DNA of 36,140 nt from Guillardia theta CCMP2712 (GCF_000315625.1 NW_005434673.1:1387739-1423878); one strand, 5' to 3'. Positions 8,092 through 36,140 are shown, counted from the stretch's first letter. Program-made: numbers and translations. The notes: generated by a model from the sequence alone, not told the origin.

Positions 8092-8135
<44 letters not shown>

Positions 8136-10232: not shown

Positions 10233-10402
10233 TCCTTTACACGAGCAGTCTCATCTTCACTCCCCAAATAGATCCTTAAATCATTCGTATCTCGATCTCC
10301 TCTGCTCCTCCTCCTTCGTCTTCCTCCTTCGTCTACCTCCTCCCCCTCACCTCAGCTACCGCAAGCCCCCCCTACTCCCTGCCCCCTCACACCTCACACA
10401 CC

Positions 10403-13893: not shown

Positions 13894-14496
13894 GCGGTAG
13901 AGTAAGATCTCCCAGATGATGGTCCTCCGGTTCCTGCAGTGCTGATGTATCCGAGCTTGAATGCCAGCACTAAAGATGAGGGTTTTCAGTTGTTTGATGC
14001 TACGCACCGCATAAGCCCGGGCCCCCGGACGCTGCGATGCATGAGAGCGCTTGTCGCAGAATGGCAACTGGGAGCCCGTGAAGAAATTTGTCGATTGCAG
14101 TCAGCATACTGATGGGGTGCTGTTCGAGTGTACCATGGATGACGAGCCGGGCGGCCAGAGGTTGAGGTGAGGGACGCGTCCGGGGATGACTCACGAGGAG
14201 CCCACCATCCTCCTTCCATCAGGCCATATACATAAGGAACACGATCACAACGATCACGTCCTGGTAAAGTCGCGGGGTACGAACCTGAGAAAGGAGGAGA
14301 GATGAGGGTGATGTGCGTGAGGGTGAGGGTATCAAAGTGAGAGTTGGTATTGGGATCTTTCAGTGTTCGAGCAGAGCAGCAGTTATTGCTCCAGCTGGAG
14401 GAGAACAGATGCTCTATAATATGATCAAGTCGCACCGCAACAGGCCGGGCGAGGAGTCCGCGGACTCCCACCTCCTTCGCTCTCGATCTCGCGGAT

Positions 14497-16403
14497 CTAC
14501 CTTCGCGGTCCTGAGTCCATCCCGACAACATTAGCATCAATCTCCTCCTGGCTGTATGCCCACCCGTACTTTCTAAGTATGTCTTTGTTTTCCACATGTC
14601 TCACTGCGAAGTTGTAGAGGTTCTCCTTCTTAACGATAAACACAATCCTCACCTCCCAGTTCCCCCCTGGCTCAACGCCCAAAGAATCCAGGCACTCAGA
14701 CATGTATCGCAGTTTGAGGTCATGTGTCTCCGCAATGGATCACCTGCACGAAACACACCGACGTCTTGTTCCAGTCGACGATCACTGCATCGTAAACCTC
14801 CTTGATTCCATTTCAATGGCTTCAGGCACATCCGCGTCATCCCATTCTCCGAGCCCTCGTCGATTTCGCTTGTGTCCAGATATTTCACATCGTACAAACC
14901 CCAGCGGTCCCATTTCTCTGGCACGCCTGGTGGCTCTGACTCCCTCCCTGACCTGAGCAATACCTGCAGCCCTGGCTCTCGTCCTATCCGAGCAAAGAAC
15001 AGCATCTCAAACAACACACCCTTAAGTGTCGGATTCGCAGCAATGCCAGAGAGCTCCTCAATCTCCCTCACAAAAGATTCTCCAAGCCTCTGTGCTAGCT
15101 CCGTGGCAACAAACCTGCTCACAGGCGTCCAGTACACTTGGCTTCCCATGCGATACTTCCCCTGTAGCCGATTGACAAACTGGTCTGAAGTATCGCCCAT
15201 GCTCATGTCAATGAGCTTCTTGTAATCAGCGACACTGTCCATCGCTTGACGAAGATCGTTGATTGCTTTCTCTGTCGTATGTTCGAACATATATCGGCAT
15301 GAGCCTCCAACAATCTGAAACTTCGACTCCACCTCTCTAGACCTTTTCTCTGCTTCTTTCACATCCGATTCCAAGCTCCATCCCATCACTCCAGCCACAC
15401 TCACGTAGAACAACTCGTGCCTAATGGCCTCTAGGTACTCCTCCAGTGTCCACGAGTACACCATCAGCTCCTCTACTTTCTCATTTCTATCTTGCTCAGG
15501 TTTTTTCTTTGCTCGAGAATTCATCGATGTCGTGATTACAACCCGCCGATTGGCCCGGTCCTGGTGGAGCCACAATACACATTCAGTAAGCACAGACTCA
15601 TGTAACCCCTGTTGATAACCGTCCAAGGACACGAGATACTTCTTGTCGCTCTGTGTCCATTCCCGAAGAATCCTCCTCAGCCCCTTGTCAATCTCATTGT
15701 GTGTCATCTCAACAACTCTCAACACTCCTTGATCGACTTGTAGGACTTTGACTGGACCCCACTTCCACACCCGTACGCACATCACTCCCCATTTCTTGTC
15801 CTTGCTCAGCGATAGGAGGAAGGACATNNNNNNNNNNNNNNNNNNNNNNNNNNNNNNNNNNNNNNNNNNNNNNNNNNNNNNNNNNNNNNNNNNNNNNNNN
15901 NNNNNNNNNNNNNNNNNNNNNNNNNNNGGAGGGCCCAGGATCCAACCCAAACACCCGGCCTTGCACACCTTCTCCTCGATGAAACGCCACTGCTCATTGA
16001 AGCATTCCCTGCAGTAGAGCACCTCCTGTTTTGCTTGCCCGGAGCTGAACTGATCCACAAAGGATCCACCGAGACAGAAAAGATTGCCCCCCTCTTTGTG
16101 CCCAACTGTATCACAATTCCAAGCTATCTCTGTCCAGCAAATGCTGTCTTCCTCCTTCAATTCAAGCTTCTCCCGCTTGATTCTGAGCTTCTCCTTCTCC
16201 TCCTTAATCTGCTCTTGAAGCTTCTCCTCCTTGATTCTAAGCTCCTGCTTCTCCTCCTTGATCTGCTCTTGNNNNNNNNNNNNNNNNNNNNNNNNNNNNN
16301 NNNNNNNNNNNNNNNNNNNNNNNNNNNNNNNNNNNNNNNNNNNNNNNNNNNNNNNNNNNNNNNNNNNNNNNTCCTTGTCGCTGCTATGTCGGCGTTTGGT
16401 CAT
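14497..16403 (-). pseudogene. CR-type coiled-coil/NTPase/REase gene copy A, frameshifted in the nuclease domain (or sequencing errors); two 100-N gaps
   Basis: Near-identical to 24075-26492, but the frame is lost at WNQGG|LRCS (about 14795) and resumes at MSECLDSLG. Stop at 14497-14499. Confidence 0.8.
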
Positions 16404-16932
16404 AGCGGCGCTGTGCTAGCGAAATTCCGAAAGAGCTCCTCAGAATCGTCGGGGAGGGTTCATATTGTAGGGGCAGATTTGAAACTGAGAGATGAATGGG
16501 TGGGGGTAATCGAATGACACATAGTACGGGGTTAATGGACTAGTCTAATCCAGATATATGATGGGTGGGGGTCATTTCGGAGTAGGTGGGGGTTTGCAAC
16601 AATCGCAATGGTGGCGCGTACATGGTGGGGAGGAGAGCATCCAATTTCACAGTAGCAGCACGTTGTGAGCCTGCAGAATATGTACACGTATTCAGAACTA
16701 CATTTGATATTCTAATCTTAAGTGAATGATATCTTGATTGTGTGTGGTACAACATTCTGTTTTCACCATTTTTCGAGTCGCCAACTGCTGCAGATTTGCA
16801 TTTAGAAGTACCATGCCGGATGATTTTGGTGTGCTGACTCACTTCTGAAGCCATGTTGATCTTGTACAAATGTATCTGAAAAGGATTTATTTATTAGCAA
16901 CATCATCTTATACGATTTCACCCATGATGATC

Positions 16933-17605
16933 TTAGTGCTCCTATAAGCAATTTCATCGACACGCTGGTCCGCAGATACCAAATGGTCTCTTAAGAGGAT
17001 CATTCTTGCTACAAAGTGAACAACAGAAGGTAGTGTACAAACCCTTTCCATTGCCACTTCTACAGATCCTGCATCTCACTCTTTTCGACCGCTGTGCATT
17101 CACCCCTTGTGTACTTTGTTGGATGAGCGTGGTCGTCAACAAGCATGATCCAACGGCGCTTCTGCTTCATGACTGTCATCATCCACGCTGGTATCTGTGC
17201 TATCCTGTCCTCCTCTTCTTGGGATCGATGAATCTGGACAACCTTGGTACGAATTTCTCATGAACACCAGATGACTGGGGACTTCTTTTGGTGGCATTCC
17301 AACACGGAAAATCTTGTATGCATCCACTTCAATGAACCCAAGTATCGTACAGAACATTCTGAATCTCCAGTCATGAGTTCCAACTTTTTCTTCTAGTCCC
17401 AGTCCACTCTGTCTGAGGTGATTGTGCACATCGATCACAGATGCTCCGTTGAAATATGACTTGATCATGGCTGTTCTTGGAGTTGATATCTTGTTTTTCT
17501 TCCCTGTTCCTGGCTGACCCTTCCTTCGATACCGAACTTTCAAATGGGGATCGGTTTCTTCTGTTGATCTACCATTCCCAAGTAATCAACCAAGTACCAA
17601 TCGAC
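16933..17605 (-). mobile_element. piggyBac-like DDD transposase 3' remnant (copy A)
   Basis: IKSYFNGASVIDVHNHLRQ...THDWRFRMFCTILGFIEVDAY, then in another frame the Cys-rich tail RCRIC...TTFCCSLC...GICG. Confidence 0.75.
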
Positions 17606-17609
17606 CATC

Positions 17610-20890
<3,281 letters not shown>

Positions 20891-21771
20891 CTTCTCCGAC
20901 CTTTCCTGCTGCCTGCTCATTTCTCTTCCTCTGTTTGGTTCTCTCAGTCTCCCCCATCCTCTCTTTCTCCTCCTCCTCCTCCTCCTCCTCCTCCTCCAGC
21001 GTTCTCCTCCCCCTCCTCCTCCCCCTTCCCCCCTCCTCCTCCCCCTCCCCCCTCCTCCTCCAGCAGCAGCAGCCGAGGAAGCAGAAAGAAGCAGCAGCAG
21101 CTGAGGAAGCAGAAAGAAGAAATGGAAAGGAAATCAGAAGAGGGAGGGACAAGTGGGGATGACACTAGAGGAGGAGAGAAGGGGGGTAGTACTAGAGGAG
21201 AGGAAGGGGGTAGTAGTGGAAGTTACACCAGGAACTCACCGAGCGTGTCCTCTTGCTCCCTCCAACGCATCTCCTCCTGGAGCATGTGGTCGCTATGGAG
21301 CTGAGAAAATGATCAGTCAGACTTGAAGTGCTACAAACCCCAACCCTACTTGCTCTTCCTCATTCTTCCTCCTCCTCCTCTTCCTTATTTCCGTCTCCTC
21401 CTCCTCCTCCTCATTATCATGATCATGATCATGATCATCATCATCAGCAGCAGCAGGAGCAGCAGGAGCAGTAGCCCCATTTATTCATCCCCGTATTCAT
21501 AATCATATTCCTGTACCTCCCTACTCCCCTCAGCATCCTCCTCCCTTATCCCCTCCTCCTCATCTTGTTTGAGAGCAGGTTGATCCACGGCTTGTCAGAG
21601 AGGATGGACTGCCGCGCAAGTCAGAGGAAGACTCAGCTGAGCAGTAGCTCACCTTTCTGCTGGGAACGTTCGTGCTGGGACCCTCCTGACCACATGGTGA
21701 GTGACAAGCGAGTAGGACGCTAGAAGAGAAAGAAGAGAGAGGAAAGGGAGGCGAGGATGAAGCGAGCAGAG

Positions 21772-21809
<38 letters not shown>

Positions 21810-22869: not shown

Positions 22870-23543
22870 GGTCGATTGGTACTTGGTTGATTACTTGGGA
22901 ATGGTAGATCAACAGAAGAAACCGATCCCCATTTGAAAGTTCGGTATCGAAGGAAGGGTCAGCCAGGAACAGGGAAGAAAAACAAGATATCAACTCCAAG
23001 AACAGCCATGATCAAGTCATATTTCAACAGAGCATCTGTGATCGATGTGCACAATCACCTCAGACAGAGTGGACTGGGACTAGAAGAAAAAGTTCCAACT
23101 CATGACTGGAGATTCAGAATGTTCTGTACGATACTTGGGTTCATTGAAGTGGATGCATACAAGATTTTCCGTGTTGGAATGCCACCAAAAGAAGTCCCCA
23201 GTCATCTGGTGTTCATGAGAAATTCGTACCAAGGTTGTCCAGATTCATCGATCCCAAGAAGAGGAGGACAGGATAGCACAGATACCAGCGTGGATGATGC
23301 CAGTCATGAAGCAGAAGCGCCGTTGGATCATGCTTGTTGACGACCACGCTCATCCAACAAAGTACACAAGGGGTGAATGCACAGCGGTCGAAAAGAGTGA
23401 GATGCAGGATCTGTAGAAGTGGCAATGGAAAGGGTTTGTACACTACCTTCTGTTGTTCACTTTGTAGCAAGAATGATCCTCTTAAGAGACCATTTGGTAT
23501 CTGCGGACCAGCGTCTCGAAGAAATTGCTTATAGGAGCACTAA
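22870..23543 (+). mobile_element. piggyBac-like transposase 3' remnant (copy B)
   Basis: YFNRASVIDVHNHLRQ and WRFRMFCTILGFIEVDAY, then the Cys-rich domain RCRIC..CCSLC..GICGPASRRNCL*EH. Frameshifted, with a premature TAG and no N-terminal catalytic part. Confidence 0.75.
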
Positions 23544-24074: not shown

Positions 24075-26492
24075 ATGACCAAACGCCGACATAGCAGCGA
24101 CAAGGAGGAGTCCACAGTTGGGAGCAAGAGGTTGCAGCTGCGCTCAGACAAGGAGGAGGAGAAGCTTCAAGAGCAGATCAAGAAGGAGAAGCAGGAGCTT
24201 AGAATCAAGGAGGAAAAGCTTCAAGAGCAGATCAAGGAGGAGAAGGATAATCTTCAAGTGAAGGAGGATAAGCTTCAAGAGCAGATCAAGGAGGAGAAGG
24301 AGAAGCTTGGAATCAAGGAGGATAAACTTCAAGAGCAGATGGAGAAACTTCAAAACCAGAAGGAAGAGGCTATGCTAAAATATTATGGGCAGGGGGAAGA
24401 AAACAAGGAGTACTGGAAGGAGGTCCTGAAGTCGCTTGAGGACCAGCAAAAGAGACTAGAAGAGGAGAAGGGAACCCTCAAGGAGGAGAAGGAGAAGCTT
24501 GGAATCAAGGAGGAGAAGGAGAAGCTTGGAATCAAGGAGGAGAAGGAGAAGCTTGGAATCAAGGAGGAGAAGCAGGAGCTTAGAATCAAGGAGGGGAAGC
24601 TTGAAATAAAGGAGGGGAATCTTCAAAACCAGAAGGAAGAGGCTATGCTGAAATATTATGGGCAGGGGGAAGAAAACAAGGAGTACTGGAAGGAGGTCCT
24701 GAAGTCGCTTGAGGACCAGCAAAAGAGACTAAAAGAGGAGAAGGGAGCCCTCAAGGAGGAGAAGGAGAAGCTTAGAATCAAGGAGGAGAAGCTTCAAGAG
24801 CAGATCAAGGAGGAGAAGCAGGAGCTTAGAATCAAGGAGGAGAAGCTTCAAGAGCAGATTAAGGAGGAGAAGGAGAAGCTTAGAATCAAGCGGGAGAAGC
24901 TTGGATTGAAGGAGGAAGACAGCATTTGCTGGACAGAGATAGCTTGGAATTGTGATACAGTTGGGCACAAAGAGGGGGGCAATCTTTTCTGTCTGGGTGG
25001 ATCCTTTGTGGATCAGTTCAGCTCCGGGCAAGCAAAACAGGAGGTGCTCTACTGCAGGGAATGCTTCAATGAGCAGTGGCGTTTCATCGAGGAGAAGGTG
25101 TGCAAGGCCGGTTGTTTGGGTTGGATCCTGGGCCCTCCAGGAACGGGGAAGACGATGACAACCATGTCCTTCCTCCTATCGCTGAGCAAGGACAAGAAAT
25201 GGGGAGTGATGTGCGTACGGGTGTGGAAGTGGGGTCCAGTCAAAGTCCTACAAGTCGATCAAGGAGTGTTGAGAGTTGTTGAGATGACACGCAATGAGAT
25301 TGACAAGGGGCTGAGGAGGATTCTTCGGGAATGGACACAGAGCGACAAGAAGTATCTCGTGTCCTTGGACGGTTATCAACAGGGGTTACATGAGTCTGTG
25401 CTTACTGAATGTGTATTGTGGCTCCACCAGGACCGGGCCAATCGGCGGGTTGTAATCACGACATCGATGACTTCTCGAGCAAAGAAAAAACCTGAGCAAG
25501 ATAGAAATGAGAAAGTAGAGGAGCTGATGGTGTACTCGTGGACACTGGAGGAGTACCTGGAGGCCATTAGGCACGAGTTGTTCTACGTGAGTGTGGCTGG
25601 AGTGATGGGATGGAGCTTGGAATCGGATGTGACAGAAGCAGAGAAAAGGTCCAGCGAGGTGGAGTCGAAGTTTCAGATTGTTGGAGGCTCATGCCGATAT
25701 ATGTTCGAACATACGACAGAGAAAGCAATCAACGATCTTCGTCAAGCGATGGACAGTGTCGCTGATTACAAGAAGCTCATTGACATGAGCATGGGCGATA
25801 CTTCAGACCAGTTTGTCAATCGGCTACAGGGGAAGTATCGCATGGGAAGCCAAGTGTACTGGACGCCTGTGAGCAGGTTTGTTGCCACGGAGCTAGCACA
25901 GAGGCTTGGAGAATCTTTTGTGAGGGAGATTGAGGAGCTCTCTGGCATTGCTGCGAATCCGACACTTAAGGGTGTGTTGTTTGAGATGCTGTTCTTTGCT
26001 CGGATAGGACGAGAGCCAGGGCTGCAGGTATTGCTCAGGTCAGGGAGGGAGTCAGAGCCACCAGGCGTGCCAGAGAAATGGGACCGCTGGGGTTTGTACG
26101 ATGTGAAATATCTGGGCACAAGCGAAATCGACGAGGCTCGGAGGAATGGGATGACGCGGATGTGCCTGAAGCCATTGAAATGGAATCAAGGAGGCTACGA
26201 TGCAGTGATCGTGGACTGGAACAAGACGTCGGTGTGTTTCGTGCAAGTGACCATTGCGGAGACACATGACCTCAAACTGCGATACATGTCTGAGTGCCTG
26301 GATTCTTTGGGCGTTGAGCCAGAGGGGAACTGGGAGGTGAGGATTGTGTTTATCGTTAAGAAGGAGAACCTCTACAACTTCGCAGTGAGACATGTGGAAA
26401 ACAAAGACATACTTACAAAGTACGGGTGGGCATACAGCCAGGAGGAGATTGATGCTAATGTTGTCGGGATGGACTCAGGACCGCGAAGGTAG
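24075..26492 (+). CDS. Intronless 805-aa Crinkler/RHS (CR)-type protein: coiled-coil header, P-loop NTPase, restriction-endonuclease-fold domain (copy B)
   Basis: Walker A GPPGTGKT, Walker B YLVSLDG, sensor-like VVITTS, VGGSCRYMF, then GVLFEMLFF...PLKWNQGGYDAVIV...FVQVT...HDLKL (E...D...QxT nuclease pattern typical of CR-REase domains). Uninterrupted ATG-TAG ORF. Confidence 0.85.
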   Translation: MTKRRHSSDKEESTVGSKRLQLRSDKEEEKLQEQIKKEKQELRIKEEKLQEQIKEEKDNLQVKEDKLQEQIKEEKEKLGIKEDKLQEQMEKLQNQKEEAMLKYYGQGEENKEYWKEVLKSLEDQQKRLEEEKGTLKEEKEKLGIKEEKEKLGIKEEKEKLGIKEEKQELRIKEGKLEIKEGNLQNQKEEAMLKYYGQGEENKEYWKEVLKSLEDQQKRLKEEKGALKEEKEKLRIKEEKLQEQIKEEKQELRIKEEKLQEQIKEEKEKLRIKREKLGLKEEDSICWTEIAWNCDTVGHKEGGNLFCLGGSFVDQFSSGQAKQEVLYCRECFNEQWRFIEEKVCKAGCLGWILGPPGTGKTMTTMSFLLSLSKDKKWGVMCVRVWKWGPVKVLQVDQGVLRVVEMTRNEIDKGLRRILREWTQSDKKYLVSLDGYQQGLHESVLTECVLWLHQDRANRRVVITTSMTSRAKKKPEQDRNEKVEELMVYSWTLEEYLEAIRHELFYVSVAGVMGWSLESDVTEAEKRSSEVESKFQIVGGSCRYMFEHTTEKAINDLRQAMDSVADYKKLIDMSMGDTSDQFVNRLQGKYRMGSQVYWTPVSRFVATELAQRLGESFVREIEELSGIAANPTLKGVLFEMLFFARIGREPGLQVLLRSGRESEPPGVPEKWDRWGLYDVKYLGTSEIDEARRNGMTRMCLKPLKWNQGGYDAVIVDWNKTSVCFVQVTIAETHDLKLRYMSECLDSLGVEPEGNWEVRIVFIVKKENLYNFAVRHVENKDILTKYGWAYSQEEIDANVVGMDSGPRR
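24150..24915 (+). repeat. Coding minisatellite mosaic: 27-bp (EEKEKLGIK), 54-bp (EEKLQEQIKEEKQELRIK) and two longer LQNQKEEAMLKYYGQGEENKEYWK modules
   Basis: Visible in both DNA and translation. Confidence 0.9.
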
Positions 26493-26787
26493 ATCCGCGA
26501 GATCGAGAGCGAAGGAGGTGGGAGTCCGCGGACTCCTCGCCCGGCCTGTTGCGGTGCGACTTGATCATATTATAGAGCATCTGTTCTCCTCCAGCTGGAG
26601 CAATAACTGCTGCTCTGCTCGAAGAGAGAAGGAGAGGGAAGAGACATGTTACAAAGAGCTCCAATGTGGACATTCCTAGGGCGGTCCAACGAGAACGCCG
26701 TGATGATTGAGGAAGGATGTCCCATTGCGAATTAGCTCGGGAATCCCTTGAGCTCGAAGGAGCGCTGACGCTGCTTTGCCACGCAGC

Positions 26788-27085
26788 ATGGCAGAGATCG
26801 AAGATGCGGACAAGGTTATCTGTGCGATGAGGTCCTCGGTGCCAGTGGACCTTGAGGAGGAAGACCTACTACTGGTGCACCTGCGGGCGTTCCAAAAAGC
26901 AGCCGTTCTGCGATGGCTCTCACCAAGGGACTGCGTTCAAGCCCATGTCCTACACTGCAACGGCAACTGAGCAGCGAAAGCTGTGCCAGTGCAAGCAGAC
27001 GGCCAACGCTCCCTTCTGTGACGGCAGGCACAAGAAGCTGCCAGAGGATGCGGCCGGCAAGGCCTTGCCCCGAACTCGGGCCTAA
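26788..27085 (+). pseudogene. Double CDGSH iron-sulfur domain gene (CISD3/MiNT-like), frameshifted
   Basis: KTYYWCTCGRSKKQPFCDGSH and LCQCKQTANAPFCDGRH. The upstream MAEIEDADKVICAMRSSVPVDLEE is in a different frame, with the shift at about 26851-26861. A CTGAC...CAG acceptor precedes the ATG. Confidence 0.8.
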
Positions 27086-27129
27086 AGGTAGAGGAGGAGG
27101 AGCAGGAGCGTGTTGTTCTTTTCGATTAT

Positions 27130-29860
27130 TCAAGTCGATTTGGAGAAAATTTCTTGCTCGGACTCTTTCACGTGGATGCTATAGCTATGATCCTTCTGCT
27201 GCTGCTGCTGCTGCTGCTGCGTCCTCCTCTCCACAATCACCTGCTAGGCGTCAGCTGCACTTGCCGCCCCTCGTTGGCTCACCTTGTTGCTTGACGCGTC
27301 CCACCACCTCGTCGACTGCACTGTGAGCTGAACCTACCGATGCATGTGAGGAAGAAGGATGGGAAAAGAATTAAGCAGAGAAAGAGGAAGGAGAGGGGAG
27401 GAACGAAACAAAGNNNNNNNNNNNNNNNNNNNNNNNNNNNNNNNNNNNNNNNNNNNNNNNNNNNNNNNNNNNNNNNNNNNNNNNNNNNNNNNNNNNNNNN
27501 NNNNNNNNNNNNNNNNNNNNNNNNNNNNNNTGACGAGTAGGCGGAGTTCCTGCAAGAGAAATGAGTGGAAGAGAGCGAAAAAGAGAAGAGGAGAAGGAGA
27601 GGGAGAAGGGGCTACACACCTCGACAGCAAGCGCCTCAACGGGGATGTCGTTGACTGCGATGATCTAGAGCACAAGAGGTGAGAGATGCGAGAGGACAGC
27701 AGCAGCNNNNNNNNNNNNNNNNNNNNNNNNNNNNNNNNNNNNNNNNNNNNNNNNNNNNNNNNNNNNNNNNNNNNNNNNNNNNNNNNNNNNNNNNNNNNNN
27801 NNNNNNAATATGATCAGGTAGGATGCTAATAGAGGAGCGAGGAGAGAAAACGAGGAAGAGAAATGAGCAGGCAGGAGGAAAGGTCGGAGAAGACCTCGTG
27901 ATGGTGTAAGGCCAGATGGAGGAGATGCCGATGCCAACGCCGCACCAGGTCTCGCGTCCTTCGACCTGATCCGGATTTTGCTGGAGAGGAGGATGAGCAT
28001 TAGGAGCAAGAGGAGCAGGAGGAGCAGGGAAGGGGCAGGAGAGCAGGAGGAGCAGGAGGAGCAGGCCGGAGGAGAAGGAGCAGGCCGGAGGAGGAGGAGA
28101 TTGGAAGGAGGAGGAGTGCCTCGTGTCGCTGTGAAGAAGCACAAGGAGGAGCAAGGGCAGAGGGGAGGGACATGAAGAACGGCAGCAGAAGCAGGGAGGA
28201 CAGAAGCATCGCGGAGAACGGAAGAGGGAGAAGGAAGGATGAAGGAGGAGGAAGAAGAGAGAGAGGAAGAGGAAGAAGAGGAAGAAGAGGAAGGGATTTA
28301 TTTCTACCTGCAACTTGACAAGTTCTTGGACCAGAAACTCGCACTGTTCGCTTGAGGGGTCAGCCTTGCGACCGTTGACAAGCTCCATGACTGCAATGAG
28401 AGAAAAGAAGAGAAAAGAAGAGGAGAGGAGAGGAGAGGAGAGGAGAGTAGAGGAGGAGGTAGGAAAAAGACGGAAAAAGGGGAAGAAGGGAAGAGGAGGG
28501 AAAGGAAAGTTGTGGAGTCAAAGGTTCAGACATTCATCGCATGGACATCGATCATCTGATCGATGGAGACGCGATATAGAAGGAGAGGAGAAGGAGCAGC
28601 ATCAGCTGAAGGAGGAGGAGGAGGAGGAGGAGCAGCAGCAGCAGCTGAGGAAGCAGAAAGAAGAAATGGAAAGGAAATCAGAAGAGGGAGGGACAAGTGG
28701 GGATGACACTAGAGGAGGAGAGAAGGGGGGTAGTACTAGAGGAGAGGAGGGGGGTAGTACTGTTCATTTTCTCTGCTCTATAGCGACCACCTGGTGTAAC
28801 TTCCACTCCTACTCGCTCTTCCTCATTCTTCCTCCTCCTCCTCTTCCTTATTTCCGTCTCCTCCTCCTCCTCCTCCTCCTCCTCATTATCATCATCATCA
28901 TCAGCAGCAGCAGCAGCAGCAGGAGCCCCATTTATTCATCCCCGTATTCATACTCATATTCCTGTACCTCCCTACTCCCCTCAGCATCCTCCTCCCTTAT
29001 CCCCTCCTCCTCACCTTGTTTGAGAGCAGGTTGATCCACGGCTTGTCGGAGAGGATGGACTGCCGCGCAAGTCAGAGGAAGACTCAGCTGAGCAGTAGCT
29101 CACCTTTCTGCTGGGAACGTTCGTGCTGGGACCCTCCTGACCACATGGTGAGTGACAAGCGAGTAGAGGAGGACGCTAGAAGAGAAAGAAGAGAGAGGAA
29201 AGGGAGGCGAGGATGAAGCGAGCGGAGGAGAGAGAGGGGGGAGGGGGGCGAGAGAGAGGAGCAGCTGCAAAGAATGAAGGGGAGGACGAGGAGCTGGAGC
29301 GAGCGTACCATGGACTTTCTCAGAGTTCCAGAGCTCTTCTTGTTTGACTTTCTCAGTTAAGCTTTGTCTCAAGCGGCTGCCAGTCAAATCAGCGCAGAAG
29401 GAGAGCACCAGCGCCAGCACTAGGACTAGGACTAGGACTAGGAGAAGGAGCAGGAGCAGGAGCAGGAGCAGGATGGCACGTCGTTGACACTGACGATCTG
29501 ATCGCCGGGCTGGACGGGAGAATCTCCGCCCTAAGAGAGCAGGGGGAAGGATGAGAACACGAGAGACGAGGAGAGAAGAAACGAGCGAGAAGACTGTCCT
29601 CACCTCTATCCCGAGCTTTTGGATGATGTAAGGATGGACGCTGGTGATGACAATCCCTGCGGGCAGATGAGGATGAGGAGACGCTGGTGATGACAATCCC
29701 TGCGGGCAGATGAGGATGAGGACGAGGATGAGGATGAGGATGATGATGAGGAGGAGGAGCAGAGACAGTCGTAGGGGGAGCGGGAGAAGGCGAGAGCAGA
29801 AGAAAGCAGAAGATAAGCAGAGGTTGGGAGAAGGGGGGCAAGACGAGAAACGTGTATGAT

Positions 29861-29941
<81 letters not shown>

Positions 29942-30236
29942 TCGAGGAAGGGAGTCACCGAGTCCTCGCCAGTCCGTCTTATGTCGCTCAGATGCGTCCA
30001 TCTCCATCTCGTGAGTCTGCCGTTCAGCTTAGCTCCTGCTCCTCCATCTCTCCTCCCTCCTCCTCCCCTTCCTCCCCTTCCTCCCTGCCTCCTCTCCCTC
30101 CCTGCCTCCCTGCCTCCCTCCCTGCTCTTCTTCATTCTCACACTCTCCTGCTTCGCTCTATTTCTCCTTGAATTCCCCACCCCTCCTCTTCCCCTCTTCC
30201 TCTTCCCACCTTCCCTGCGTCCTGCACGACTGGATG
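27130..30236 (-). pseudogene. Two-PDZ-domain gene, decayed and 5'-truncated at the transposase remnant (copy B)
   Basis: Spliced exons give PDZ1 as DWRGL|GIVITSVHPYIIQKLGIE|GGDSPVQPGDQIVSVNDVP (exons 29959-30016, 29604-29656, about 29473-29530) and PDZ2 as WCGVGIGISSIWPYTITR...IIAVNDIPVEALAVE|ELRLLV(KGPASSL)|VQLTVQ. The last exon ends EQEIFSKST*. Exons are missing and there are indels. Confidence 0.7.
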
Positions 30237-30239
30237 GTT

Positions 30240-30983
30240 GATTGGTACTTGGTTGATTACTTGGAAATGGTAGATCAACAGAAGAAACCGATCCCCATTT
30301 GAAAGTTCGGTATCGAAGGAAGGGTCAGCCAGGAACAGGGAAGAAAAACAAGATTATCAACTCCAGAACGGCCATGATCAAGTCATATTTCAACGGAGCA
30401 TCTGTGATCGATGTGCACAATCACCTTAGACAGAGTGGACTGGGACTAGAAGAAAAAGTTCCAACTCATGACTGGAGATTCAGAATGCTCTGTACGATAC
30501 TTGGGTTCATTGAAGTGGATGCAGACAAGATTTTCCGTGTTGGAANNNNNNNNNNNNNNNNNNNNNNNNNNNNNNNNNNNNNNNNNNNNNNNNNNNNNNN
30601 NNNNNNNNNNNNNNNNNNNNNNNNNNNNNNNNNNNNNNNNNNNNNATGAGAAATTCGTACGAAGGTTCCTCCAGAGTCTTAAATCCCAAGAAGAGGAGGA
30701 CAGGATAGCACAGATACCAGCGTGGATGATGACAGTCATGAAGCAGAAGCGCGGTTGGATCATGCTTGTTGACGACCACGCTCGATTTTTCATCCAACAA
30801 AGTACACAAGGGGTGAATGCACAGCGGTCGAAAAGAGTGAGATGCAGGATCTGTAGAAGTGGCAATGGAAAGGGTTTGTACACTACCTTCTGTTGTTCAC
30901 TTTGTAGCAAGAATGATCCTATTAAGAGACCATTTGGTATCTGCGGACCAGCGTGTCGATGAAATTGCTTACAGGAGCACTAA
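30240..30983 (+). mobile_element. piggyBac-like transposase 3' remnant (copy C)
   Basis: YFNGASVIDVHNHLRQ, EKFVRRFLQSLKS and the Cys-rich tail; ends NCLQEH* after a frameshift. Contains a 100-N gap. Confidence 0.75.
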
Positions 30984-31567
30984 GATCATCATGGGTGAAA
31001 TCGTATAAGATGATGTTGCTAATAAATAAATCCTTTTCAGGTACATTTGTACAAGATCAACATTGCTTCAGAAGTGAGTCAGCACACCAAAATCATCCGG
31101 CATGGTACTTCCAAATGCAAATCTGCAGCAGTTGGCGACTCAAAAAATGGTGAAAACAGAATGTTGTACCACACACAATCAAGATATCATTCACTTAAGA
31201 TTAGAATATCAAATGTAGTTCTGAATACGTGTACATATTCTGCAGGCTCACAACGTGCTGCTACTGTGAAATTGGATGCTCTCCTCCCCACCATGTACGC
31301 GCCACCATTGCGATCGTTGCAAACCCCCACCTACTCCGAAATGACCCCCACCCATCATATATCCGGATTAGACTAGTCCATTAACCCCGTACTATGTGTG
31401 AATCGATTACCCCCACCCAGTCATGGAGCACTTGCCGCTCTGATACTGTCTACGATTGGAATCAGGAGAACATTTCATCTCTCAGTTTCAAATCTGCCCC
31501 TACAATATGAACCCCTCCCCGACGATTCTGAGGAGCTCTTTCGGAATTTCGCTAGCACAGCGCCGCT

Positions 31568-34183
31568 ATGACCAAACGCCGACATAGCAGCGACAAGGAG
31601 GAGTCCACAGTTGGGAGCAAGAGGTTGCAGCAGGCCAAGGGACTGCGCTCAGACAACAAGGAGGAGAAGCTTCAAGAGCAGATCAAGGAGGAGAAGCAGG
31701 AGCTCAGAATCAAGGAGGATAATCTCCAAGTGAAGGAGGATAAACTTCAAGAGCAGATCAAGGAGGAGAAGAAGGAGCTCAGAATCAAGGAGGAGAAACT
31801 TCAAAAGCAGATCGAGGAGGAGAAGGAGAAGCTCAGAATCAAAGAGGAGAAGCTTCAAAAGCAGATCGAGGAGGAGAAGCAGGAGCTCAGAATCAAGGAG
31901 GAGAAGCTTGGATTGAAGGAGCAGAATCTTCAAAACCAGAAGGAAGAGGCTATGCTGAAATATTATGGGCAAGGGGAAGAAAACAAGGAGTACTGGAAGG
32001 TTGTCCTGAAGTCGCTTGAGGACCAGCAAAACAGACTAGAAGAGGAGAAGGGAACCCTCAAGAAGGAGAAGGAGAAGTTTGAATTGAAGGAGGAGAAGCA
32101 GGAGCTTGGAATCAAGGAGGAGAAGCAGGAGCTTGGAATCAAGGAGGAGAAGGAGAAGCTTGGAATCAAGGAGGAGAAGGAGAAGCTCAGAATCAAGGAG
32201 GAGAAGGAGAAGCTCAGAATCAAGGAGGAGAAGCTTGAATTGAAGGAGCAGAAACGTCAAAACCAGAAGGAAGAGGCTATGCTGAAATATTATGGGCAAG
32301 GGGAAGAAAACAAGGAGTACTGGAAGGTTGTCCTGAAGTCGCTTGAGGACCAGCAAAACAGACTAGAAGAGGAGAAGGGAACCCTCAAGAAGGAGAAGGA
32401 GAAGCTTGAATTGAAGGAGGAGAGGCTTCAAGAGCAGATCAAGGAGGAGAAGCAGGAGCTTAGAATCAAGGAGGAGAAGCTTCAAGAGCAGATCAAGGAG
32501 GAGAAGCAGGAGCTCAGAATCAAGGAGGAGATGCTTCAAGAGCAGATCGAGGAGGAGAAGGAGAAGCTTGGAATCAAGAGGGAGAAGCTTGAATTGAAGG
32601 AGGAAGACAGCATTTGCTGGACAGAGATAGCTTGGAATTGTGATACAGTTGGGCACAAAGAGGGGGGCAATCTTTTCTGTCTCGGTGGATCCTTTGTGGA
32701 TCAGTTCAGCTCCGGGCAAGCAAAACAGGAGGTGCTCTACTGCAGGGAATGCTTCAATGAGCAGTGGCGTTTCATCGAGGAGAAGGTGTGCAAGGCCGGG
32801 TGTTTGGGTTGGATCCTGGGCCCTCCAGGAACGGGGAAGACGATGACAACCATGTCCTTCCTCCTATCGCTGAGCAAGGACAAGAAATGGGGAGTGATGT
32901 GCGTACGGGTGTGGAAGTGGGGTCCAGTCAAAGTCCTACAAGTCGATCAAGGAGTGTTGAGAGTTGTTGAGATGACACGCAATGAGATTGACAAGGGGCT
33001 GAGGAGGATTCTTCGGGAATGGACACAGAGCGACAAGAAGTATCTCGTGTCCCTGGACGGTTATCAACAGGGGTCACATGAGTCTGTGCTTACTGAATGT
33101 GTATTGTGGCTCCACCAGGACCGGGCCAATCGGCGGGTTGTAATCACGACATCGATGAATTCTCGAGCAAAGAAAAAACCTGAGCAAGATAGAAATGAGA
33201 AAGTAGAGGAGCTGATGGTGTACTCGTGGACACTGGAGGAGTACCTGGAGGCCATTAGGCACGAGTTGTTCTACGTGAGTGTGGCTGGAGTGATGGAATG
33301 GAGCTTGGAATCGAATGTGACAGAAGCAGAGAAAAGGTCTAGAGAGGTGGAGTCGAAGTTTCAGATTGTTGGAGGCTCATGCCGATATATGTTCGAACAT
33401 ACGACAGAGAAAGCAATCAACGATCTTCGTCAAGCGATGGACAGTGTCGCTGATTACAAGAAGCTCATTGACATGAGCATGGGCGATACTTCAGACCAGT
33501 TTGTCAATCGGCTACAGGGGAAGTATCGCATGGGAAGCCAAGTGTACTGGACGCCTGTGAGCAGGTTTGTTGCCACGGAGCTAGCACAGAGGCTTGGAGA
33601 ATCTTTTGTGAGGGAGATTGAGGAGCTCTCTGGCATTGCTGCGAATCCGACACTTAAGGGTGTGTTGTTTGAGATGCTGTTCTTTGCTCGGATAGGACGA
33701 GAGCCAGGGCTGCAGGTATTGCTCAGGTCAGGGAGGGAGTCAGAGCCACCAGGCGTGCCAGAGAAATGGGACCGCTGGGAATTGTACGCTGTGAAAGATC
33801 TGGACACAAGCGAAATCGACGAGGCTCGGAGGAATGGGATGACGCGGATGTGCCTGAAGCCATTGAAATGGAATCAAGGAGGCTACGATGCAGTGATCGT
33901 GGACTGGAACAAGACGTCGGTGTGTTTCGTGCAAGTGACCATTGCGGAGACACATGACCTCAAACTGCGATACATGTCTGAGTGCCTGGATTCTTTGGGC
34001 GTTGAGCCAGAGGGGAACTGGGAGGTGAGGATTGTGTTTATCGTTAAGAAGGAGAACCTCTACAAGTTCGCAGTGAGACATGTGGAAAACAAAGACATAC
34101 TTTTAAGAAAGTACGGGTGGGCATACAGCCAGGAGGAGATTGATGCTAATGTTGTCGGGATGGACTCAGGACCGCGAAGGTAG
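31568..34183 (+). CDS. Intronless 871-aa CR-type coiled-coil/NTPase/REase protein (copy C)
   Basis: Same catalytic motifs as copy B, intact ORF, longer coiled-coil header. Confidence 0.85.
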   Translation: MTKRRHSSDKEESTVGSKRLQQAKGLRSDNKEEKLQEQIKEEKQELRIKEDNLQVKEDKLQEQIKEEKKELRIKEEKLQKQIEEEKEKLRIKEEKLQKQIEEEKQELRIKEEKLGLKEQNLQNQKEEAMLKYYGQGEENKEYWKVVLKSLEDQQNRLEEEKGTLKKEKEKFELKEEKQELGIKEEKQELGIKEEKEKLGIKEEKEKLRIKEEKEKLRIKEEKLELKEQKRQNQKEEAMLKYYGQGEENKEYWKVVLKSLEDQQNRLEEEKGTLKKEKEKLELKEERLQEQIKEEKQELRIKEEKLQEQIKEEKQELRIKEEMLQEQIEEEKEKLGIKREKLELKEEDSICWTEIAWNCDTVGHKEGGNLFCLGGSFVDQFSSGQAKQEVLYCRECFNEQWRFIEEKVCKAGCLGWILGPPGTGKTMTTMSFLLSLSKDKKWGVMCVRVWKWGPVKVLQVDQGVLRVVEMTRNEIDKGLRRILREWTQSDKKYLVSLDGYQQGSHESVLTECVLWLHQDRANRRVVITTSMNSRAKKKPEQDRNEKVEELMVYSWTLEEYLEAIRHELFYVSVAGVMEWSLESNVTEAEKRSREVESKFQIVGGSCRYMFEHTTEKAINDLRQAMDSVADYKKLIDMSMGDTSDQFVNRLQGKYRMGSQVYWTPVSRFVATELAQRLGESFVREIEELSGIAANPTLKGVLFEMLFFARIGREPGLQVLLRSGRESEPPGVPEKWDRWELYAVKDLDTSEIDEARRNGMTRMCLKPLKWNQGGYDAVIVDWNKTSVCFVQVTIAETHDLKLRYMSECLDSLGVEPEGNWEVRIVFIVKKENLYKFAVRHVENKDILLRKYGWAYSQEEIDANVVGMDSGPRR

Positions 34184-34477
34184 ATCCGCGAGATCGAGAG
34201 CGAAGGAGGTGGGAGTCCGCGGACTCTCGCCCGGCCTGTTGCGGTGCGACTTGATCATATTATAGAGCATCTGTTCTCCTCCAGCTGGAGCAATAACTGC
34301 TGCTCTGCTCGAAGAGAGAAGGAGAGGGAACAGATATGTTACAAAGAGCTCCAATGTGGACATTCCTAGGGCGGTCCAACGAGAACGCCGTGATGATTGA
34401 GGAAGGATGTCCCATTGCGAATTAGCTCGGGAATCCCTTGAGCTCGAAGGAGCGCTGACGCTGGTTTGCCACGCAGC

Positions 34478-34777
34478 ATGGCAGAGATCGAAGATGCGGA
34501 CAAGGTTATCTGTGCGATGAGGTCCTCGGTGCCAGTGGACCTTGAGGAGGAAGACCTACTACTGGTGCACCTGCGGGCGTTCCAAAAAGCAGCCGTTCTG
34601 CGATGGCTCTCTCCAAGGGACTGCGTTCAAGCCCATGTCCTACACTGCAACGGCAACTGAGCAGCGAAAGCTGTGCCAGTGCAAGCAGACGGCCAACGCT
34701 CCCTTCTGTGACGGCAGGCACAAGAAGCTGCCAGAGGATGCGGCCGGCAAGGCCTTGCCCCGAACTCGGTGGCCTAA
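34478..34777 (+). pseudogene. Double CDGSH gene copy 2; same frameshift plus CDGSH>CDGSL
   Basis: WCTCGRSKKQPFCDGSLQ. A 2-nt difference near 34770 takes the TAA out of frame. Confidence 0.8.
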
Positions 34778-34821
34778 AGGTAGAGGAGGAGGAGCAGGAG
34801 CGTGTTGTTCTTTTCGATTAT

Positions 34822-36140
34822 TCAAGTCGATTTGGAGAAAATTTCTTGCTCGGACTCTTTCACGTGGATGCTATAGCTATGATCCTGCTGCTGCTGCTGC
34901 TGCTGCTGCTGCGTCCTCCTCTCCACAATCACCTGCTAGGCGTCAGCTGCACTTGCCGCCCCTCGTTGGCTCACCTTGTTGCTTGACGCGTCCCACCACC
35001 TCGTCGACTGCACTGTGAGCTGAACCTACCGATGCATGTGAGGAGGAAGGATGGGAAAAGAATTAAGCAGAGAAAGAGGAAGGAGAGGGGAGGAACGAAA
35101 CAAAGAAGGGGAGAGAGAAGGAAGGAAGCAGAGAATGGGGGGCAAGAGAGTTGAGGACAGGACAAGACAGGACAGGACAGGACAGGACAGGACAGGAGGT
35201 ACCAAGCTGCTCGCTGGTCCCTTGACGAGTAGGCGGAGTTCCTGCAAGAGAAATGAGTGGAAGAGAGCGAAAAAGAGAAGAGGAGAAGGAGAGGGAGAAG
35301 GGGCTACACACCTCGACAGCAAGCGCCTCAACGGGGATGTCGTTGACTGCGATGATCTAGAGCACAAGAGGTGAGAGATGCGAGAGGACAGCAGCAGCTG
35401 TAAAGGTGAGCGAGAGGGGGCAGACAAGAGCGGGGAGGAGGGGAGCGACAAGAAGAAGTAGAGAAGAGAAGCGAGGAAATATGATCAGGTAGGATGCAAA
35501 TAGAGGAGCGAGGAGAGAAAACGAGGAAGAGAAATGAGCAGGCAGGAGGAAAGGTCGGAGAAGACCTCGTGATGGTGTAAGGCCAGATGGAGGAGATGCC
35601 GATGCCAACGCCGCACCAGGTCTCGCGTCCTTCGACCTGATCCGGATTTTGCTGGAGAGGAGGATGAGCATTAGGAGCAAGAGGAGCAGGAGGAGCAGGG
35701 AAGGGGCAGGAGAGCAGGAGGAGCAGGAGGAGCAGGCCGGAGGAGAAGGACGCAGGCCGGAGGAGGAGGAGATTGGAAGGAGGAGGAGTGCCTCGTGTCG
35801 CTGTGAAGAAGCACAAGGAGGAGCAAGGGCAGAGGGGAGGGACATGAAGAACGGCAGCAGAAGCAGGGAGGACAGAAGCATCGCGGAGAACGGAAGAGGG
35901 AGAAGGAAGGATGAAGGAGGAGGAAGAAGAGAGAGAGGAAGAGGAAGAAGAGGAAGAAGAGCAAGGGGGTGATTTTTACTAGGAACCAAACACATTGAGC
36001 AATTAATCCCCATCAGAGTTGCAAGAAGCGTTGAACATGAAACCCACACGCCAACTCCATGGCAGTGAACGAGAAAAGAAGAGAAAAGCGAGGAGAGGAG
36101 TGGAGTGGAGAGGAGAGTAGAGGAGGAGGTAGGAAAAAGA
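34822..36140 (-). pseudogene. 3' exons of the PDZ gene (copy C)
   Basis: CGVGIGISSIWPYTITR, IIAVNDIPVEALAVE, ELRLLVKGPASSL and VQLTVQSTRWWDASSNK exons with GT-AG introns. Confidence 0.7.

What the first reader, a model, noticed from the sequence alone, without database searches (positions are those of the whole stretch)
14366..36140. Amplifying chimeric cassette built around an intact CR NTPase-nuclease gene, with a transposase remnant and decaying captured host genes
Seen: three recent copies of a ~7.5 kb unit (the inverted copy A stops before the CDGSH gene). The unit has a piggyBac-like 3' remnant, an intronless NTPase-REase ORF, a frameshifted CDGSH gene and a broken intron-containing PDZ gene. 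Only the CR ORF is intact (copies B and C); every passenger is broken. Known: CR proteins with an NTPase+REase core are widespread eukaryotic effectors and have been proposed to derive from transposon-like elements. Inference: this is a selfish or conflict locus, possibly in a free-living alga, where the nuclease gene is either selected for copy number or itself causes the breaks that amplify it and drag neighbouring DNA along, Pack-element style.
Basis: partly seen in the sequence, partly recalled or inferred. Interest (0 to 1): 0.85.

Follow-up and report, generated by a model that had tools for sequence, protein, structure and literature searches.

The report
Duplicated Crinkler-type nuclease gene block
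The end of a Guillardia theta scaffold carries a recently duplicated 7.5-kb block (two direct copies plus one fold-back copy) holding one member of a roughly 100-copy Crinkler-type ATPase-nuclease gene family and some junk DNA copied along with it; it looks like ordinary gene-family turnover, with nothing showing that the nuclease amplifies itself.

Summary
Homologue names identify the genome as Guillardia theta CCMP2712. The window's last 22 kb are the end of scaffold C1. They hold two direct copies (B, C) and one inverted copy (A) of a 7.4-7.7 kb block, and more copies open scaffold C123.

Each block carries:
- a 5'-truncated, frameshifted piggyBac-family fragment;
- an intronless ORF with a coiled-coil header, a P-loop NTPase and a restriction-endonuclease-like domain, 30-33% identical over 98% of its length to Crinkler C-termini;
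- 1.07 kb copied from scaffold C160, with a CDGSH gene carrying a 2-bp deletion;
- low-complexity spacer.

The PDZ gene is not supported, although RNA-type contigs show a spliced minus-strand transcript in the spacer.

The selfish-amplification reading is not supported:
- The passengers were fragments when captured, or broke once before B and C split.
- The CR coding sequence is no better conserved between B and C than its neighbours (99.0% against 99.0-99.7%).
- Copy A's CR gene is itself frameshifted.
- Different subfamilies share no conserved ends.
- Block limits differ between copies.

The family has at least 97 loci, is mostly intact (omega about 0.5) and commonly sits in tandem or inverted clusters. 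This scan already holds 42 Crinkler notes on other DNA of this genome. Verdict: a new member of a known kind, of modest interest.

The parts
12731..13906 (+). Older, degraded CR paralogue, convergent with copy A
   Evidence: Six-frame matches at 55-65% aa identity with TGA, TAA and TAG stops (C1:1400469-1401644). 75% nt identity to B 25434-26300.
14366..20936 (-). Inverted copy A, the left arm of the fold-back. Reading rightwards: 131 bp of 3' flank, CR gene, piggyBac remnant, then inverted spacer.
   Evidence: 98.9-99.4% identical to B in reverse complement. The outer junction at 14366 lies inside contiguous sequence.
14497..16403 (-). CR gene of copy A: frameshifted, with two assembly gaps inside
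   Evidence: Two +1 insertions at the equivalents of B 26194 and 26250. Gaps 15828-15927 and 16272-16371.
16372..17980 (-). piggyBac-family 3' remnant of copy A
   Evidence: 99.4% identical to B 22808-24106.
19872..21436 (.). Centre of the fold-back: arms 19872-20226 and 21080-21436 around an 853-bp asymmetric loop (20227-21079). The arm ends lie in (CTG)n/(CAG)n.
   Evidence: 98.6-100% complementary arms within one gap-free contig. Sequence at the arm ends.
22910..23978 (+). piggyBac-family 3' remnant of copy B: 5'-truncated and frameshifted
   Evidence: 88% nt identity to C8:383-1500 and C147:12845-13873, which run upstream into PF13843 hits. tblastx 58% over 93 aa and 47% over 68 aa to the C181 transposase frame, in two different window frames. 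zf-Tnp_2 E=0.06 on copy C.
24075..26492 (+). CR gene B, 805 aa: coiled-coil repeat header, P-loop NTPase, helical linker, REase-like domain
   Evidence: Open ORF. AAA_25 E=2e-6. 30-33% identity over 98% coverage to annotated Crinkler proteins. AF2 pLDDT 90.6 with AAA+/STAND matches at Z 11-12. C-terminal domain pLDDT 91.7 with McrC at Z 6.0 and many REases at Z 4-5.
26725..27706 (+). Segment copied from scaffold C160 (copy B)
   Evidence: 90-93% nt identity to C160:58378-59371. The homology starts about 60 bp upstream of the CDGSH ATG.
26788..27085 (+). CDGSH iron-sulfur gene copy, frameshifted by a 2-bp deletion near 26858
   Evidence: PF09360 E=1.3e-18. Alignment with the intact C160 and L029 copies. 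The deletion is present in DNA-type run X4, and the intact C160-type version is the abundant one in RNA-type run X9.
27531..27983 (-). Two exons (27983-27895 and 27664-about 27584) of a spliced minus-strand transcript, with a GT..AG intron at 27894-27665
   Evidence: The joint 27664/27895 appears in RNA-type runs X9 and X7, whereas the one DNA-type X4 contig spanning the place reads through it, bridging the gap with 79 letters. Intron ends. The 27531-27706 exon is C160-derived, and the other exists only in cassette copies.
27807..30173 (.). Low-complexity CT/GA/CTG-rich spacer of unit B
   Evidence: No Pfam domain. Elsewhere in the genome it matches only cassette copies and simple repeats. B and C are 90.6% identical here.
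30276..31450 (+). piggyBac-family 3' remnant of copy C. It keeps 54 bp that are deleted in A and B.
31568..34183 (+). CR gene C, 871 aa. It differs from B mainly in the number of header repeats.
   Evidence: Open ORF. 99.3% identical to the C123 copy.
34415..35468 (+). C160-derived segment of copy C, including the CDGSH copy with the same 2-bp deletion
35478..36140 (.). Start of the spacer of unit C, cut off by the end of scaffold C1
   Evidence: the contig has 1,423,878 bases, which is window position 36140.

Best explanation
This is a young segmental-duplication cluster at a repeat-rich scaffold end of Guillardia theta.

A roughly 7.5-kb block was assembled once. It combined:
- one gene of a large, intronless, lineage-specific Crinkler-type family (coiled-coil header, AAA+/STAND-like P-loop NTPase, helical linker, PD-(D/E)xK-like domain);
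- a dead piggyBac-family 3' fragment just upstream of that gene;
- 1.07 kb of DNA copied from the C160 locus, holding a CDGSH gene and the last exon of its convergent neighbour;
- low-complexity spacer.

The block was then multiplied as a whole. Unequal or ectopic recombination gave the head-to-tail copies (B, C, and those on C123). One fold-back event, primed in CTG/CAG repeats, gave the inverted copy A.

SHOWN: the anatomy of the block, the C160 origin of one part, the shared CDGSH frameshift, the fold-back geometry, and the size and intactness of the family.

INFERRED: the recombination mechanisms, and that the CR protein acts as an ATP-regulated nuclease inside the cell (nuclear or conflict-related) rather than as a secreted effector.

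The passengers are hitch-hikers of a DNA-level duplication. They are not evidence that the nuclease drives the amplification.
For: - Repeat map and identities.
- The window ends at the end of the scaffold, and C123 opens with the same block.
- An independent ENA contig carries spacer, piggyBac piece, CR, CDGSH and spacer in the same order.
- C160 holds an intact 104-aa CDGSH ORF with no CR gene nearby.
- B and C share the 2-bp deletion, which is absent from L029.
- The family has at least 97 six-frame matches, nearly all full-length ones without stops, many in tandem or inverted clusters on C84, C19, C17, C13, C193, C28 and C132.
- Family-wide omega is 0.45-0.6.
- A second young burst (C132 twice, C180, C96) has blocks of 5-8 kb with differing limits and no transposase ORF.
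- Between subfamilies, homology stops within about 40 nt of the stop codon.
- The fold-back arm ends lie in CTG/CAG tracts.
- Structure and homology of the protein.
Against: - The assembly is gap-ridden and breaks inside the array, so true copy number and long-range order are unknown.
- Two young bursts in one family, dispersed over several scaffolds, are more than a single accident. They leave room for an active process.
- The AAA+ domain resembles the transposition ATPases MuB and TnsC about as well as it resembles STAND and archaeal ATPases.
- The REase-like fold match is weak (Z at most 6, and nothing from Foldseek).
- The predicted active site is non-canonical (D...QxT).
Confidence: 0.68

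Rival explanations
1. One reading: a selfish or conflict locus in which the CR nuclease is selected for copy number, or itself makes the breaks that amplify it and drag neighbouring DNA along.
For: - Recent amplification, including a fold-back of the kind that follows a double-strand break.
- A second, independent young burst in another subfamily.
- The CR ORFs are intact in B, C, C123 and L029, while the passengers are broken.
- The family is fast-evolving, with omega about 0.5.
Against: - CR is no better conserved than the flanking DNA between B and C.
- Omega of the young copies cannot be told from 1.
- Copy A's CR is frameshifted.
- The passengers were fragments at capture, or broke once before the B/C split.
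- There are almost no CR reads in the one raw RNA run.
- No nuclease activity or cleavage site is known.
Confidence: 0.13
2. The block, or the CR gene alone, is a discrete mobile element (a non-autonomous piggyBac, Helitron, Crypton or Pack-type transduplicating element) that captured host fragments.
For: - A transposase remnant lies about 100 bp upstream of the CR start.
- Gene fragments were captured from another locus.
- Copies lie on two scaffolds with different proximal flanks.
- CTCTC and GAGAG motifs sit at the two ends of the CR segment.
- Unchecked scan notes describe similar arrays with Crypton or 'TCTCTC' ends elsewhere in this genome.
Against: - Only the 3' part of the piggyBac element is present, and CR lies outside it.
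- No terminal inverted repeats surround the block; all long inverted repeats are whole-copy pairs.
- The proximal limits differ: inside the piggyBac piece on C123, and 131 bp after the CR stop for copy A.
- Subfamilies share no noncoding ends.
- The second burst has variable block limits and no transposon ORF.
Confidence: 0.08
3. Assembly artefact: the copies are mis-scaffolded or uncollapsed haplotypes of one or two real copies.
For: - Eight gaps in 22 kb, the array sits at a scaffold end, and most component boundaries coincide with gaps.
- Six variants private to B were not seen in any of three other runs.
Against: - The A/unique junction (14366), the fold-back centre (19872-21816) and the spacer-to-piggyBac junction (27807-30545) each lie in gap-free sequence.
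- Copies differ by 1-9% in a component-specific way.
- Two variant types of the CR 3' region occur in independent runs.
- An independent contig has spacer on both sides of one unit.
- C123 has a different proximal flank.
Confidence: 0.08

Closest known systems
CR (Crinkler-RHS-type) proteins with an NTPase + HTH + REase C-terminal module (Zhang et al. 2016, as summarised in PMC5289972)
   Same: - Full-length homology of the 480-aa module to annotated Phytophthora, Aphanomyces, Pythium and chytrid Crinklers (30-33% identity, 98% coverage, E about 1e-50).
- P-loop motifs and a predicted AAA+-like domain, a helical region and an REase-like domain.
- Occurrence in free-living eukaryotes and variable alpha-helical headers are already described.
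   Different: - No ubiquitin-like Crinkler header (PF20147) or LxLFLAK motif.
- The header is an in-frame repeat coiled coil with a basic N-terminus.
- The organism is a free-living alga, so a role as an injected effector is unlikely.
Tail-to-head arrays of DC-domain CRN genes in transposon-rich regions of Phytophthora infestans (Haas et al. 2009, cited in PMC5289972), and subtelomeric RHS families of trypanosomes
   Same: Members of the CR family sit in tandem arrays next to transposon remnants and in unstable, repeat-rich regions.
   Different: - Here the associated element is a piggyBac-family fragment, not a Helitron or retroelement.
- The array includes a fold-back inversion.
- A subtelomeric position is not shown: no telomere repeats were found.
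Birth-and-death clusters of NLR/STAND immune genes
   Same: A large lineage-specific family, tandem and inverted clusters, elevated omega, a coiled-coil N-terminus followed by a STAND-like NTPase, and recent local duplications with pseudogenes.
   Different: There is no C-terminal repeat sensor domain; a nuclease-like domain follows the NTPase. No immune function is known.
Pack-MULE or Helitron-type gene-fragment capture
   Same: A block containing fragments of unrelated host genes is multiplied.
   Different: There are no terminal inverted repeats and no constant ends. The capture includes intergenic DNA and parts of two convergent genes, as expected for a DNA-level segmental copy.

Membership tests
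CR (Crinkler-RHS-type) protein family | C-terminal NTPase-HTH-REase module homologous to that of known CRNs | tested here: met
   HMMER E 1e-47 to 1e-56, 30-33% identity and 96-98% coverage to proteins named Crinkler (CRN) in Phytophthora, Lagenidium, Aphanomyces, Pythium and chytrids.
CR (Crinkler-RHS-type) protein family | P-loop NTPase with Walker A and Walker B motifs | tested here: met
   GPPGTGKT and hhhhDG are nearly invariant in a 60-sequence alignment. The AF2 model matches AAA+/STAND ATPases at Z 11-12.
CR (Crinkler-RHS-type) protein family | Restriction-endonuclease (PD-(D/E)xK) fold with catalytic residues | tested here: inconclusive
   The domain model has pLDDT 91.7. The best VIA hits are McrC at Z 6.0 followed by about 30 REase-superfamily nucleases at Z 3.4-4.9. 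Foldseek and PDB sequence searches found nothing. The conserved residues are E...GGYD...QxT...H, with no canonical lysine.
CR (Crinkler-RHS-type) protein family | Ubiquitin-like Crinkler N-terminal header (PF20147, LxLFLAK) | tested here: not met
   No PF20147 hit on the whole B and C proteins. The N-terminus is a KEEK-rich repeat coiled coil, as in other G. theta paralogues.
CR (Crinkler-RHS-type) protein family | Delivery into another cell as an effector | not testable with these tools
   No signal peptide is evident. The organism is a free-living alga.
piggyBac transposon (DDE_Tnp_1_7) | DDE transposase domain PF13843 | tested here: not met
   The window holds only the part downstream of about profile position 290. 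Fuller copies on C8, C88, C147 and C181 carry PF13843.
piggyBac transposon (DDE_Tnp_1_7) | C-terminal cysteine-rich domain | tested here: inconclusive
   zf-Tnp_2 E=0.061, below the cut-off. 47% identity over 68 aa to the C-terminal part of the C181 transposase frame.
piggyBac transposon (DDE_Tnp_1_7) | Terminal inverted repeats and a TTAA target duplication | tested here: not met
   The 5' end is absent, and no TTAA is evident where the 3' homology ends.
CDGSH iron-sulfur domain proteins (PF09360) | CDGSH motifs | tested here: met
   Two stretches match, E=1.3e-18.
CDGSH iron-sulfur domain proteins (PF09360) | Intact reading frame | tested here: not met
   A 2-bp deletion in B and C relative to the intact 104-aa ORFs of C160 and L029.
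PDZ domain gene | Match to a PDZ profile | tested here: not met
   No hit at E up to 10 on the candidate exons. No PF00595 match in the window among 150 scored of 375 candidates. Only short PDZ-like strings were seen (IIAVNDIPVE, AGIVITSV).
Pack-type / transduplicating DNA transposon | Terminal inverted repeats and constant ends around the captured fragments | tested here: not met
   All long inverted repeats are whole-copy pairs. The proximal limits of the block differ between C1 and C123.

The most novel reading that the evidence does not exclude
The Crinkler-type NTPase-nuclease genes of Guillardia theta actively promote their own duplication. Their products, or the repeats that travel with them, would create breaks that are repaired by fold-back and template-switching. 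That would explain repeated young bursts in different subfamilies, palindromic junctions and captured foreign DNA. Such genes would be a living intermediate between a transposon and a cellular toxin or immune gene.
Probability: 0.08. Interest if true: 0.8.

Novelty: new member of a known kind. Interest (0 to 1): 0.3.

Why it matters
Crinkler-type NTPase-nuclease proteins are best known as effectors of crop and amphibian pathogens. What they do in free-living eukaryotes is an open question.

This locus documents three things in a model cryptophyte: a very large, intronless, fast-evolving and mostly intact family with coiled-coil headers; at least two very recent bursts of block duplication; and a clean example of a fold-back inversion anchored in CTG/CAG repeats with captured DNA of known origin.

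That makes G. theta a tractable place to test whether these proteins are intracellular defence or conflict nucleases. As a genomic structure, however, the cassette is an ordinary product of segmental duplication. The present data give no sign that the nuclease drives it.

Tried and rejected
- **PDZ gene.** Pfam scans of all candidate pieces and a genome-wide PF00595 scan gave nothing in the window. The upstream part of the possible parent gene on C160 lies in a 10.9-kb run of N, so its identity cannot be recovered.
- **CR carried inside a piggyBac element.** Rejected: only a 5'-truncated 3' part is present, and CR lies downstream of where the element's homology ends.
- **Conserved termini of a CR 'unit'.** Rejected: homology between subfamilies ends 14-40 nt after the stop codon.
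- **Telomere repeats at the scaffold ends.** None found in the window or at the start of C123, so 'subtelomeric' remains a guess.
- **Copy number from depth.** Not possible. The only DNA-type run is held as contigs, with no single-copy control in the laid stretch.
- **Expression.**
  - The one raw RNA run gave only a handful of reads on CR. A pile-up at 23757-23913 consists of reads that fit only partly, and it was disregarded.
  - Contigs of two runs cover the CR coding sequence at modest depth. Their splice joint shows they contain RNA. This suggests transcription, but not from which copy.
- **Zhang et al. 2016** (NAR 44:3513) could not be read. Its content is cited through the review PMC5289972.
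- **PDB sequence searches** with the protein and with the domain profile gave no meaningful hit.

Full report
**Where this is**

The window is G000:C1:1387739-1423878. Window position 36140 is the last base of a 1,423,878-bp scaffold in an 87.1-Mb, 669-contig genome. Names attached to near-identical proteins identify the genome as Guillardia theta CCMP2712, a free-living cryptophyte alga.

**Checking the repeat structure**

Self-comparison shows two direct copies.
- B runs from about 21080 to 28470.
- C runs from about 28626 to the scaffold end.
- The period is 7366-7692 bp, depending on the component.

It also shows one inverted copy, A (14366-20936).
- A mirrors B from B's upstream spacer through the transposon remnant and the CR gene, to 131 bp past the stop codon (B 26623).
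- A and B form a palindrome of about 5.5 kb per arm around an 853-bp asymmetric centre (20227-21079).
- The inner arm ends lie in (CTG)n/(CAG)n tracts.

Three junctions each lie in gap-free sequence:
- the outer junction of A (14366);
- the palindrome centre (19872-21816);
- the spacer-to-remnant junction between B and C (27807-30545).

There are eight gaps, two more than the program listed (27707-27806 and 30546-30645).
- Every gap is collinear with a paralogous copy, so order and orientation across the gaps are consistent.
- The 100-N gaps stand for about 25, 690, 79, 79 and 35 nt, judged from the other copies.
- One of them (27707-27806) is bridged by 79 letters in a DNA-type contig of an independent run.
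- No gap lies in the CR ORFs of B or C.
- Copy A's CR gene contains two gaps, so its frame cannot be followed there.

The array is not confined to this scaffold. Scaffold C123 (204 kb) begins, on its minus strand, with remnant, CR, CDGSH, spacer, remnant and the start of another CR. Its proximal flank is unrelated to the window. An independent 5-kb ENA metagenome contig (L029) carries spacer end, remnant, CR (808 aa, 98% identical), CDGSH and spacer start in the same order, with two internal deletions. The unit and its tandem context are therefore real. The true copy number is unknown, because the assembly breaks inside the array.

**The components**

*(i) CR gene*
- B (24075-26492, 805 aa) and C (31568-34183, 871 aa) are open. 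They differ mainly in the number of repeats in a KEEK-rich coiled-coil header.
- The C-terminal 480 aa are 30-33% identical over 96-98% of their length to proteins annotated as Crinkler (CRN) in oomycetes and chytrids.
- An AlphaFold model is confident (pLDDT 90.6).
  - Residues 1-280 match AAA+/STAND-type ATPases at Z 11-12. The matches include archaeal ATPases, Avs5, MuB and TnsC.
  - The last 190 residues, folded alone (pLDDT 91.7), match McrC at Z 6.0 and then a long run of restriction-endonuclease-superfamily nucleases at Z 3.4-4.9.
  - Foldseek finds nothing significant for that domain.
- The REase-like fold is thus supported by the make-up of the hit list and by the published classification of this module, but not by any single strong match.
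- The conserved residues are E...GGYD...QxT...H, without the canonical lysine.
- There is no Crinkler ubiquitin-like header. Other G. theta paralogues also have coiled-coil headers.

*(ii) piggyBac-like remnant*
- Directly, only a sub-threshold zf-Tnp_2 match is seen.
- However, 22910-23978 is 88% identical to repeats on C8, C88 and C147 that continue upstream into PF13843 transposase matches.
- Its translation matches the end of the DDE domain and the C-terminal region of an 803-aa transposase frame on C181, but in two different frames.
- It is therefore a 5'-truncated, frameshifted 3' fragment of a multi-copy piggyBac-family element. The CR start codon lies about 100-140 bp beyond where that homology ends.

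*(iii) CDGSH*
- 26852-27085 matches PF09360 at E=1.3e-18.
- A 1.07-kb stretch (26725-27706 in B, 34415-35468 in C) is 90-93% identical to C160:58378-59371. That locus has an intact 104-aa ORF and no CR gene on its scaffold.
- B and C share a 2-bp deletion, which is absent from C160 and from the cassette-linked copy in L029.
- The deletion is present in the DNA-type run X4. The abundant contig in the RNA-type run X9 is the intact C160 version.

*(iv) PDZ*
- Not supported.
- There is a real feature behind it, though. Contigs of two runs skip 27665-27894, whereas the one DNA-type X4 contig spanning the place reads through it.
- On the minus strand that skipped piece begins GT and ends AG.
- The downstream exon is part of the C160-derived DNA. 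It is the last exon of a gene convergent with CDGSH, whose upstream part is hidden in a 10.9-kb run of N on C160.
- The upstream exon exists only in cassette copies.
- The capture therefore took a piece of genomic DNA spanning parts of two convergent genes. That indicates a DNA-level copy, not a retrocopy.

**Is CR preserved while the passengers decay?**

Identity between B and C, by component:

| Component | Identity |
|---|---|
| Transposon remnant | 95.4-97.5% |
| CR coding sequence outside the repeats | 98.97% |
| CR-CDGSH intergenic | 99.0% |
| CDGSH | 99.7% |
| DNA after CDGSH | 99.3% |
| Spacer | 90.6% |

- The CR coding sequence is not better conserved than its neighbours. The pattern looks like a mosaic of exchange between copies.
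- Omega among the young CR copies is 0.4-0.9, based on 3-20 substitutions per pair, which cannot be distinguished from neutrality.
- Copy A's CR has two +1 insertions.
- The remnant and the neighbour-gene exon were already fragments when captured.
- The only post-capture disabling event in a passenger is one shared deletion.

The description 'CR intact in B and C, passengers broken' is correct. The inference of differential selection within this cassette is not supported.

**The family**
- The 480-aa core has at least 97 six-frame matches in the genome. Of roughly 50 full-length ones, all but two are free of stops and none is interrupted. The family is therefore intronless and largely intact.
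- Pairwise omega is 0.45-0.6 over dS 0.05-0.6. That indicates constrained but fast evolution.
- Many members sit in tandem or mixed-orientation clusters on C84, C19, C17, C13, C193, C28 and C132.
- A second subfamily shows an even younger burst (dS about 0) of four copies on three scaffolds. Its duplicated blocks are 5-8 kb with differing limits and contain no transposase-like ORF.
- Between subfamilies, nucleotide homology ends within about 40 nt of the stop codon. There are no conserved noncoding termini of the kind a transposon would have.
- The piggyBac and CDGSH pieces accompany only this young subfamily.

**Expression**
- In the one raw RNA-seq run (about 6% of it was read), the CR coding sequence received only a few reads. 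The CDGSH reads carry the C160-specific base.
- Contigs of two runs cover the CR coding sequence at modest depth. The splice joint shows that these runs contain RNA. This suggests transcription but does not say from which copy.

**Mechanism**
- The best reading is that a chimeric block was built once, probably during break repair that copied DNA from C160 next to a CR gene lying beside a dead transposon.
- It was then multiplied as a block by unequal or ectopic recombination and by one fold-back event at CTG/CAG repeats.
- An older CR pseudogene (12731-13906) and a second palindrome (7576-12108, 95%) just upstream show that this scaffold end has been rearranging for some time.
- By homology and fold, the protein is most likely an ATP-regulated nuclease acting inside the cell. 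This is inferred, not shown.

**Comparison with what is known**
- CR proteins with this module, their presence in free-living eukaryotes, their variable helical headers, their proposed transposon ancestry and their occurrence in tandem arrays in transposon-rich regions are all described (Zhang et al. 2016 and Haas et al. 2009, as summarised in PMC5289972).
- This scan has already logged 42 Crinkler notes on other DNA of this genome. In one that was followed up, the agent likewise concluded that the structure was a rearrangement scar and not a mobile cassette. I did not recheck those notes.
- One unchecked note proposes TCTCTC-flanked transposon-like units. Here CTCTC and GAGAG do sit at the two ends of the CR segment. 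In this CT/GA-rich DNA, and given, I regard that as chance.

**Verdict**

The self-amplifying-nuclease interpretation is untested and gains no support from the tests that were possible. The locus is a new member of a known kind.

Noticed in passing
window 7576-12108: A second palindrome just upstream: arms 7576-9583 and 12108-10090, 95% identical overall with 99% cores, around a spacer of about 500 bp. The ORFs tested in it have no Pfam domain.
   Followed up: partly
window 12731-13906 (+): An old CR pseudogene, 55-65% aa identity with several stops, convergent with copy A and ending 460 bp from A's breakpoint.
   Followed up: partly
G000:C132:100110-116607, C180:76991-82464, C96:175749-183722 (L032-L040): A second CR subfamily with four nearly identical copies (dS about 0) on three scaffolds. 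The duplicated blocks are 5-8 kb with different limits and contain no transposase ORF.
   Followed up: partly
window 27531-27983 (-): A spliced minus-strand transcript in the 'spacer': a GT..AG intron at 27894-27665 joins a cassette-only exon to an exon copied from C160. It is seen in contigs of two RNA-type runs, while the one DNA-type contig spanning the place reads through.
   Followed up: partly
G000:C160:59844-70739 (L028, L030): A 10.9-kb run of N lies directly beside the intact CDGSH gene. It hides the rest of the convergent neighbour gene whose last exon was copied into the cassette.
   Followed up: no
window 23985 (B), 16490 (A) versus 31425-31478 (C): A 54-bp deletion at the 3' end of the piggyBac remnant is shared by A and B but absent from C and from the C8 and C88 elements. 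Together with the shared CR variants, this makes A and B sisters, with C closest to the C123 copy.
   Followed up: yes
window 24904, 24995, 25112, 25471, 25652, 25655: Six bases private to copy B were not seen in contigs of any of the three other runs that cover them. They could be rare, strain-specific, or errors of the reference.
   Followed up: no
window 24900-27400: Contigs of freshwater and lake-water metagenome runs hold 26-68% of the sampled words of this stretch. That is unexpected for an alga described as marine, and contamination or relatives were not examined.
   Followed up: no
window 23757-23913: A pile-up of RNA reads (depth 36, one orientation) that fit only partly and run on into unrelated letters at 23873-23882. 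They probably come from other copies of the piggyBac-family repeat or from an unrelated abundant RNA.
   Followed up: no
window 29660 and 29703 (-): The string HLPAGIVITSV is encoded twice, 43 nt apart and in different frames, which is a small tandem duplication inside the low-complexity spacer.
   Followed up: no
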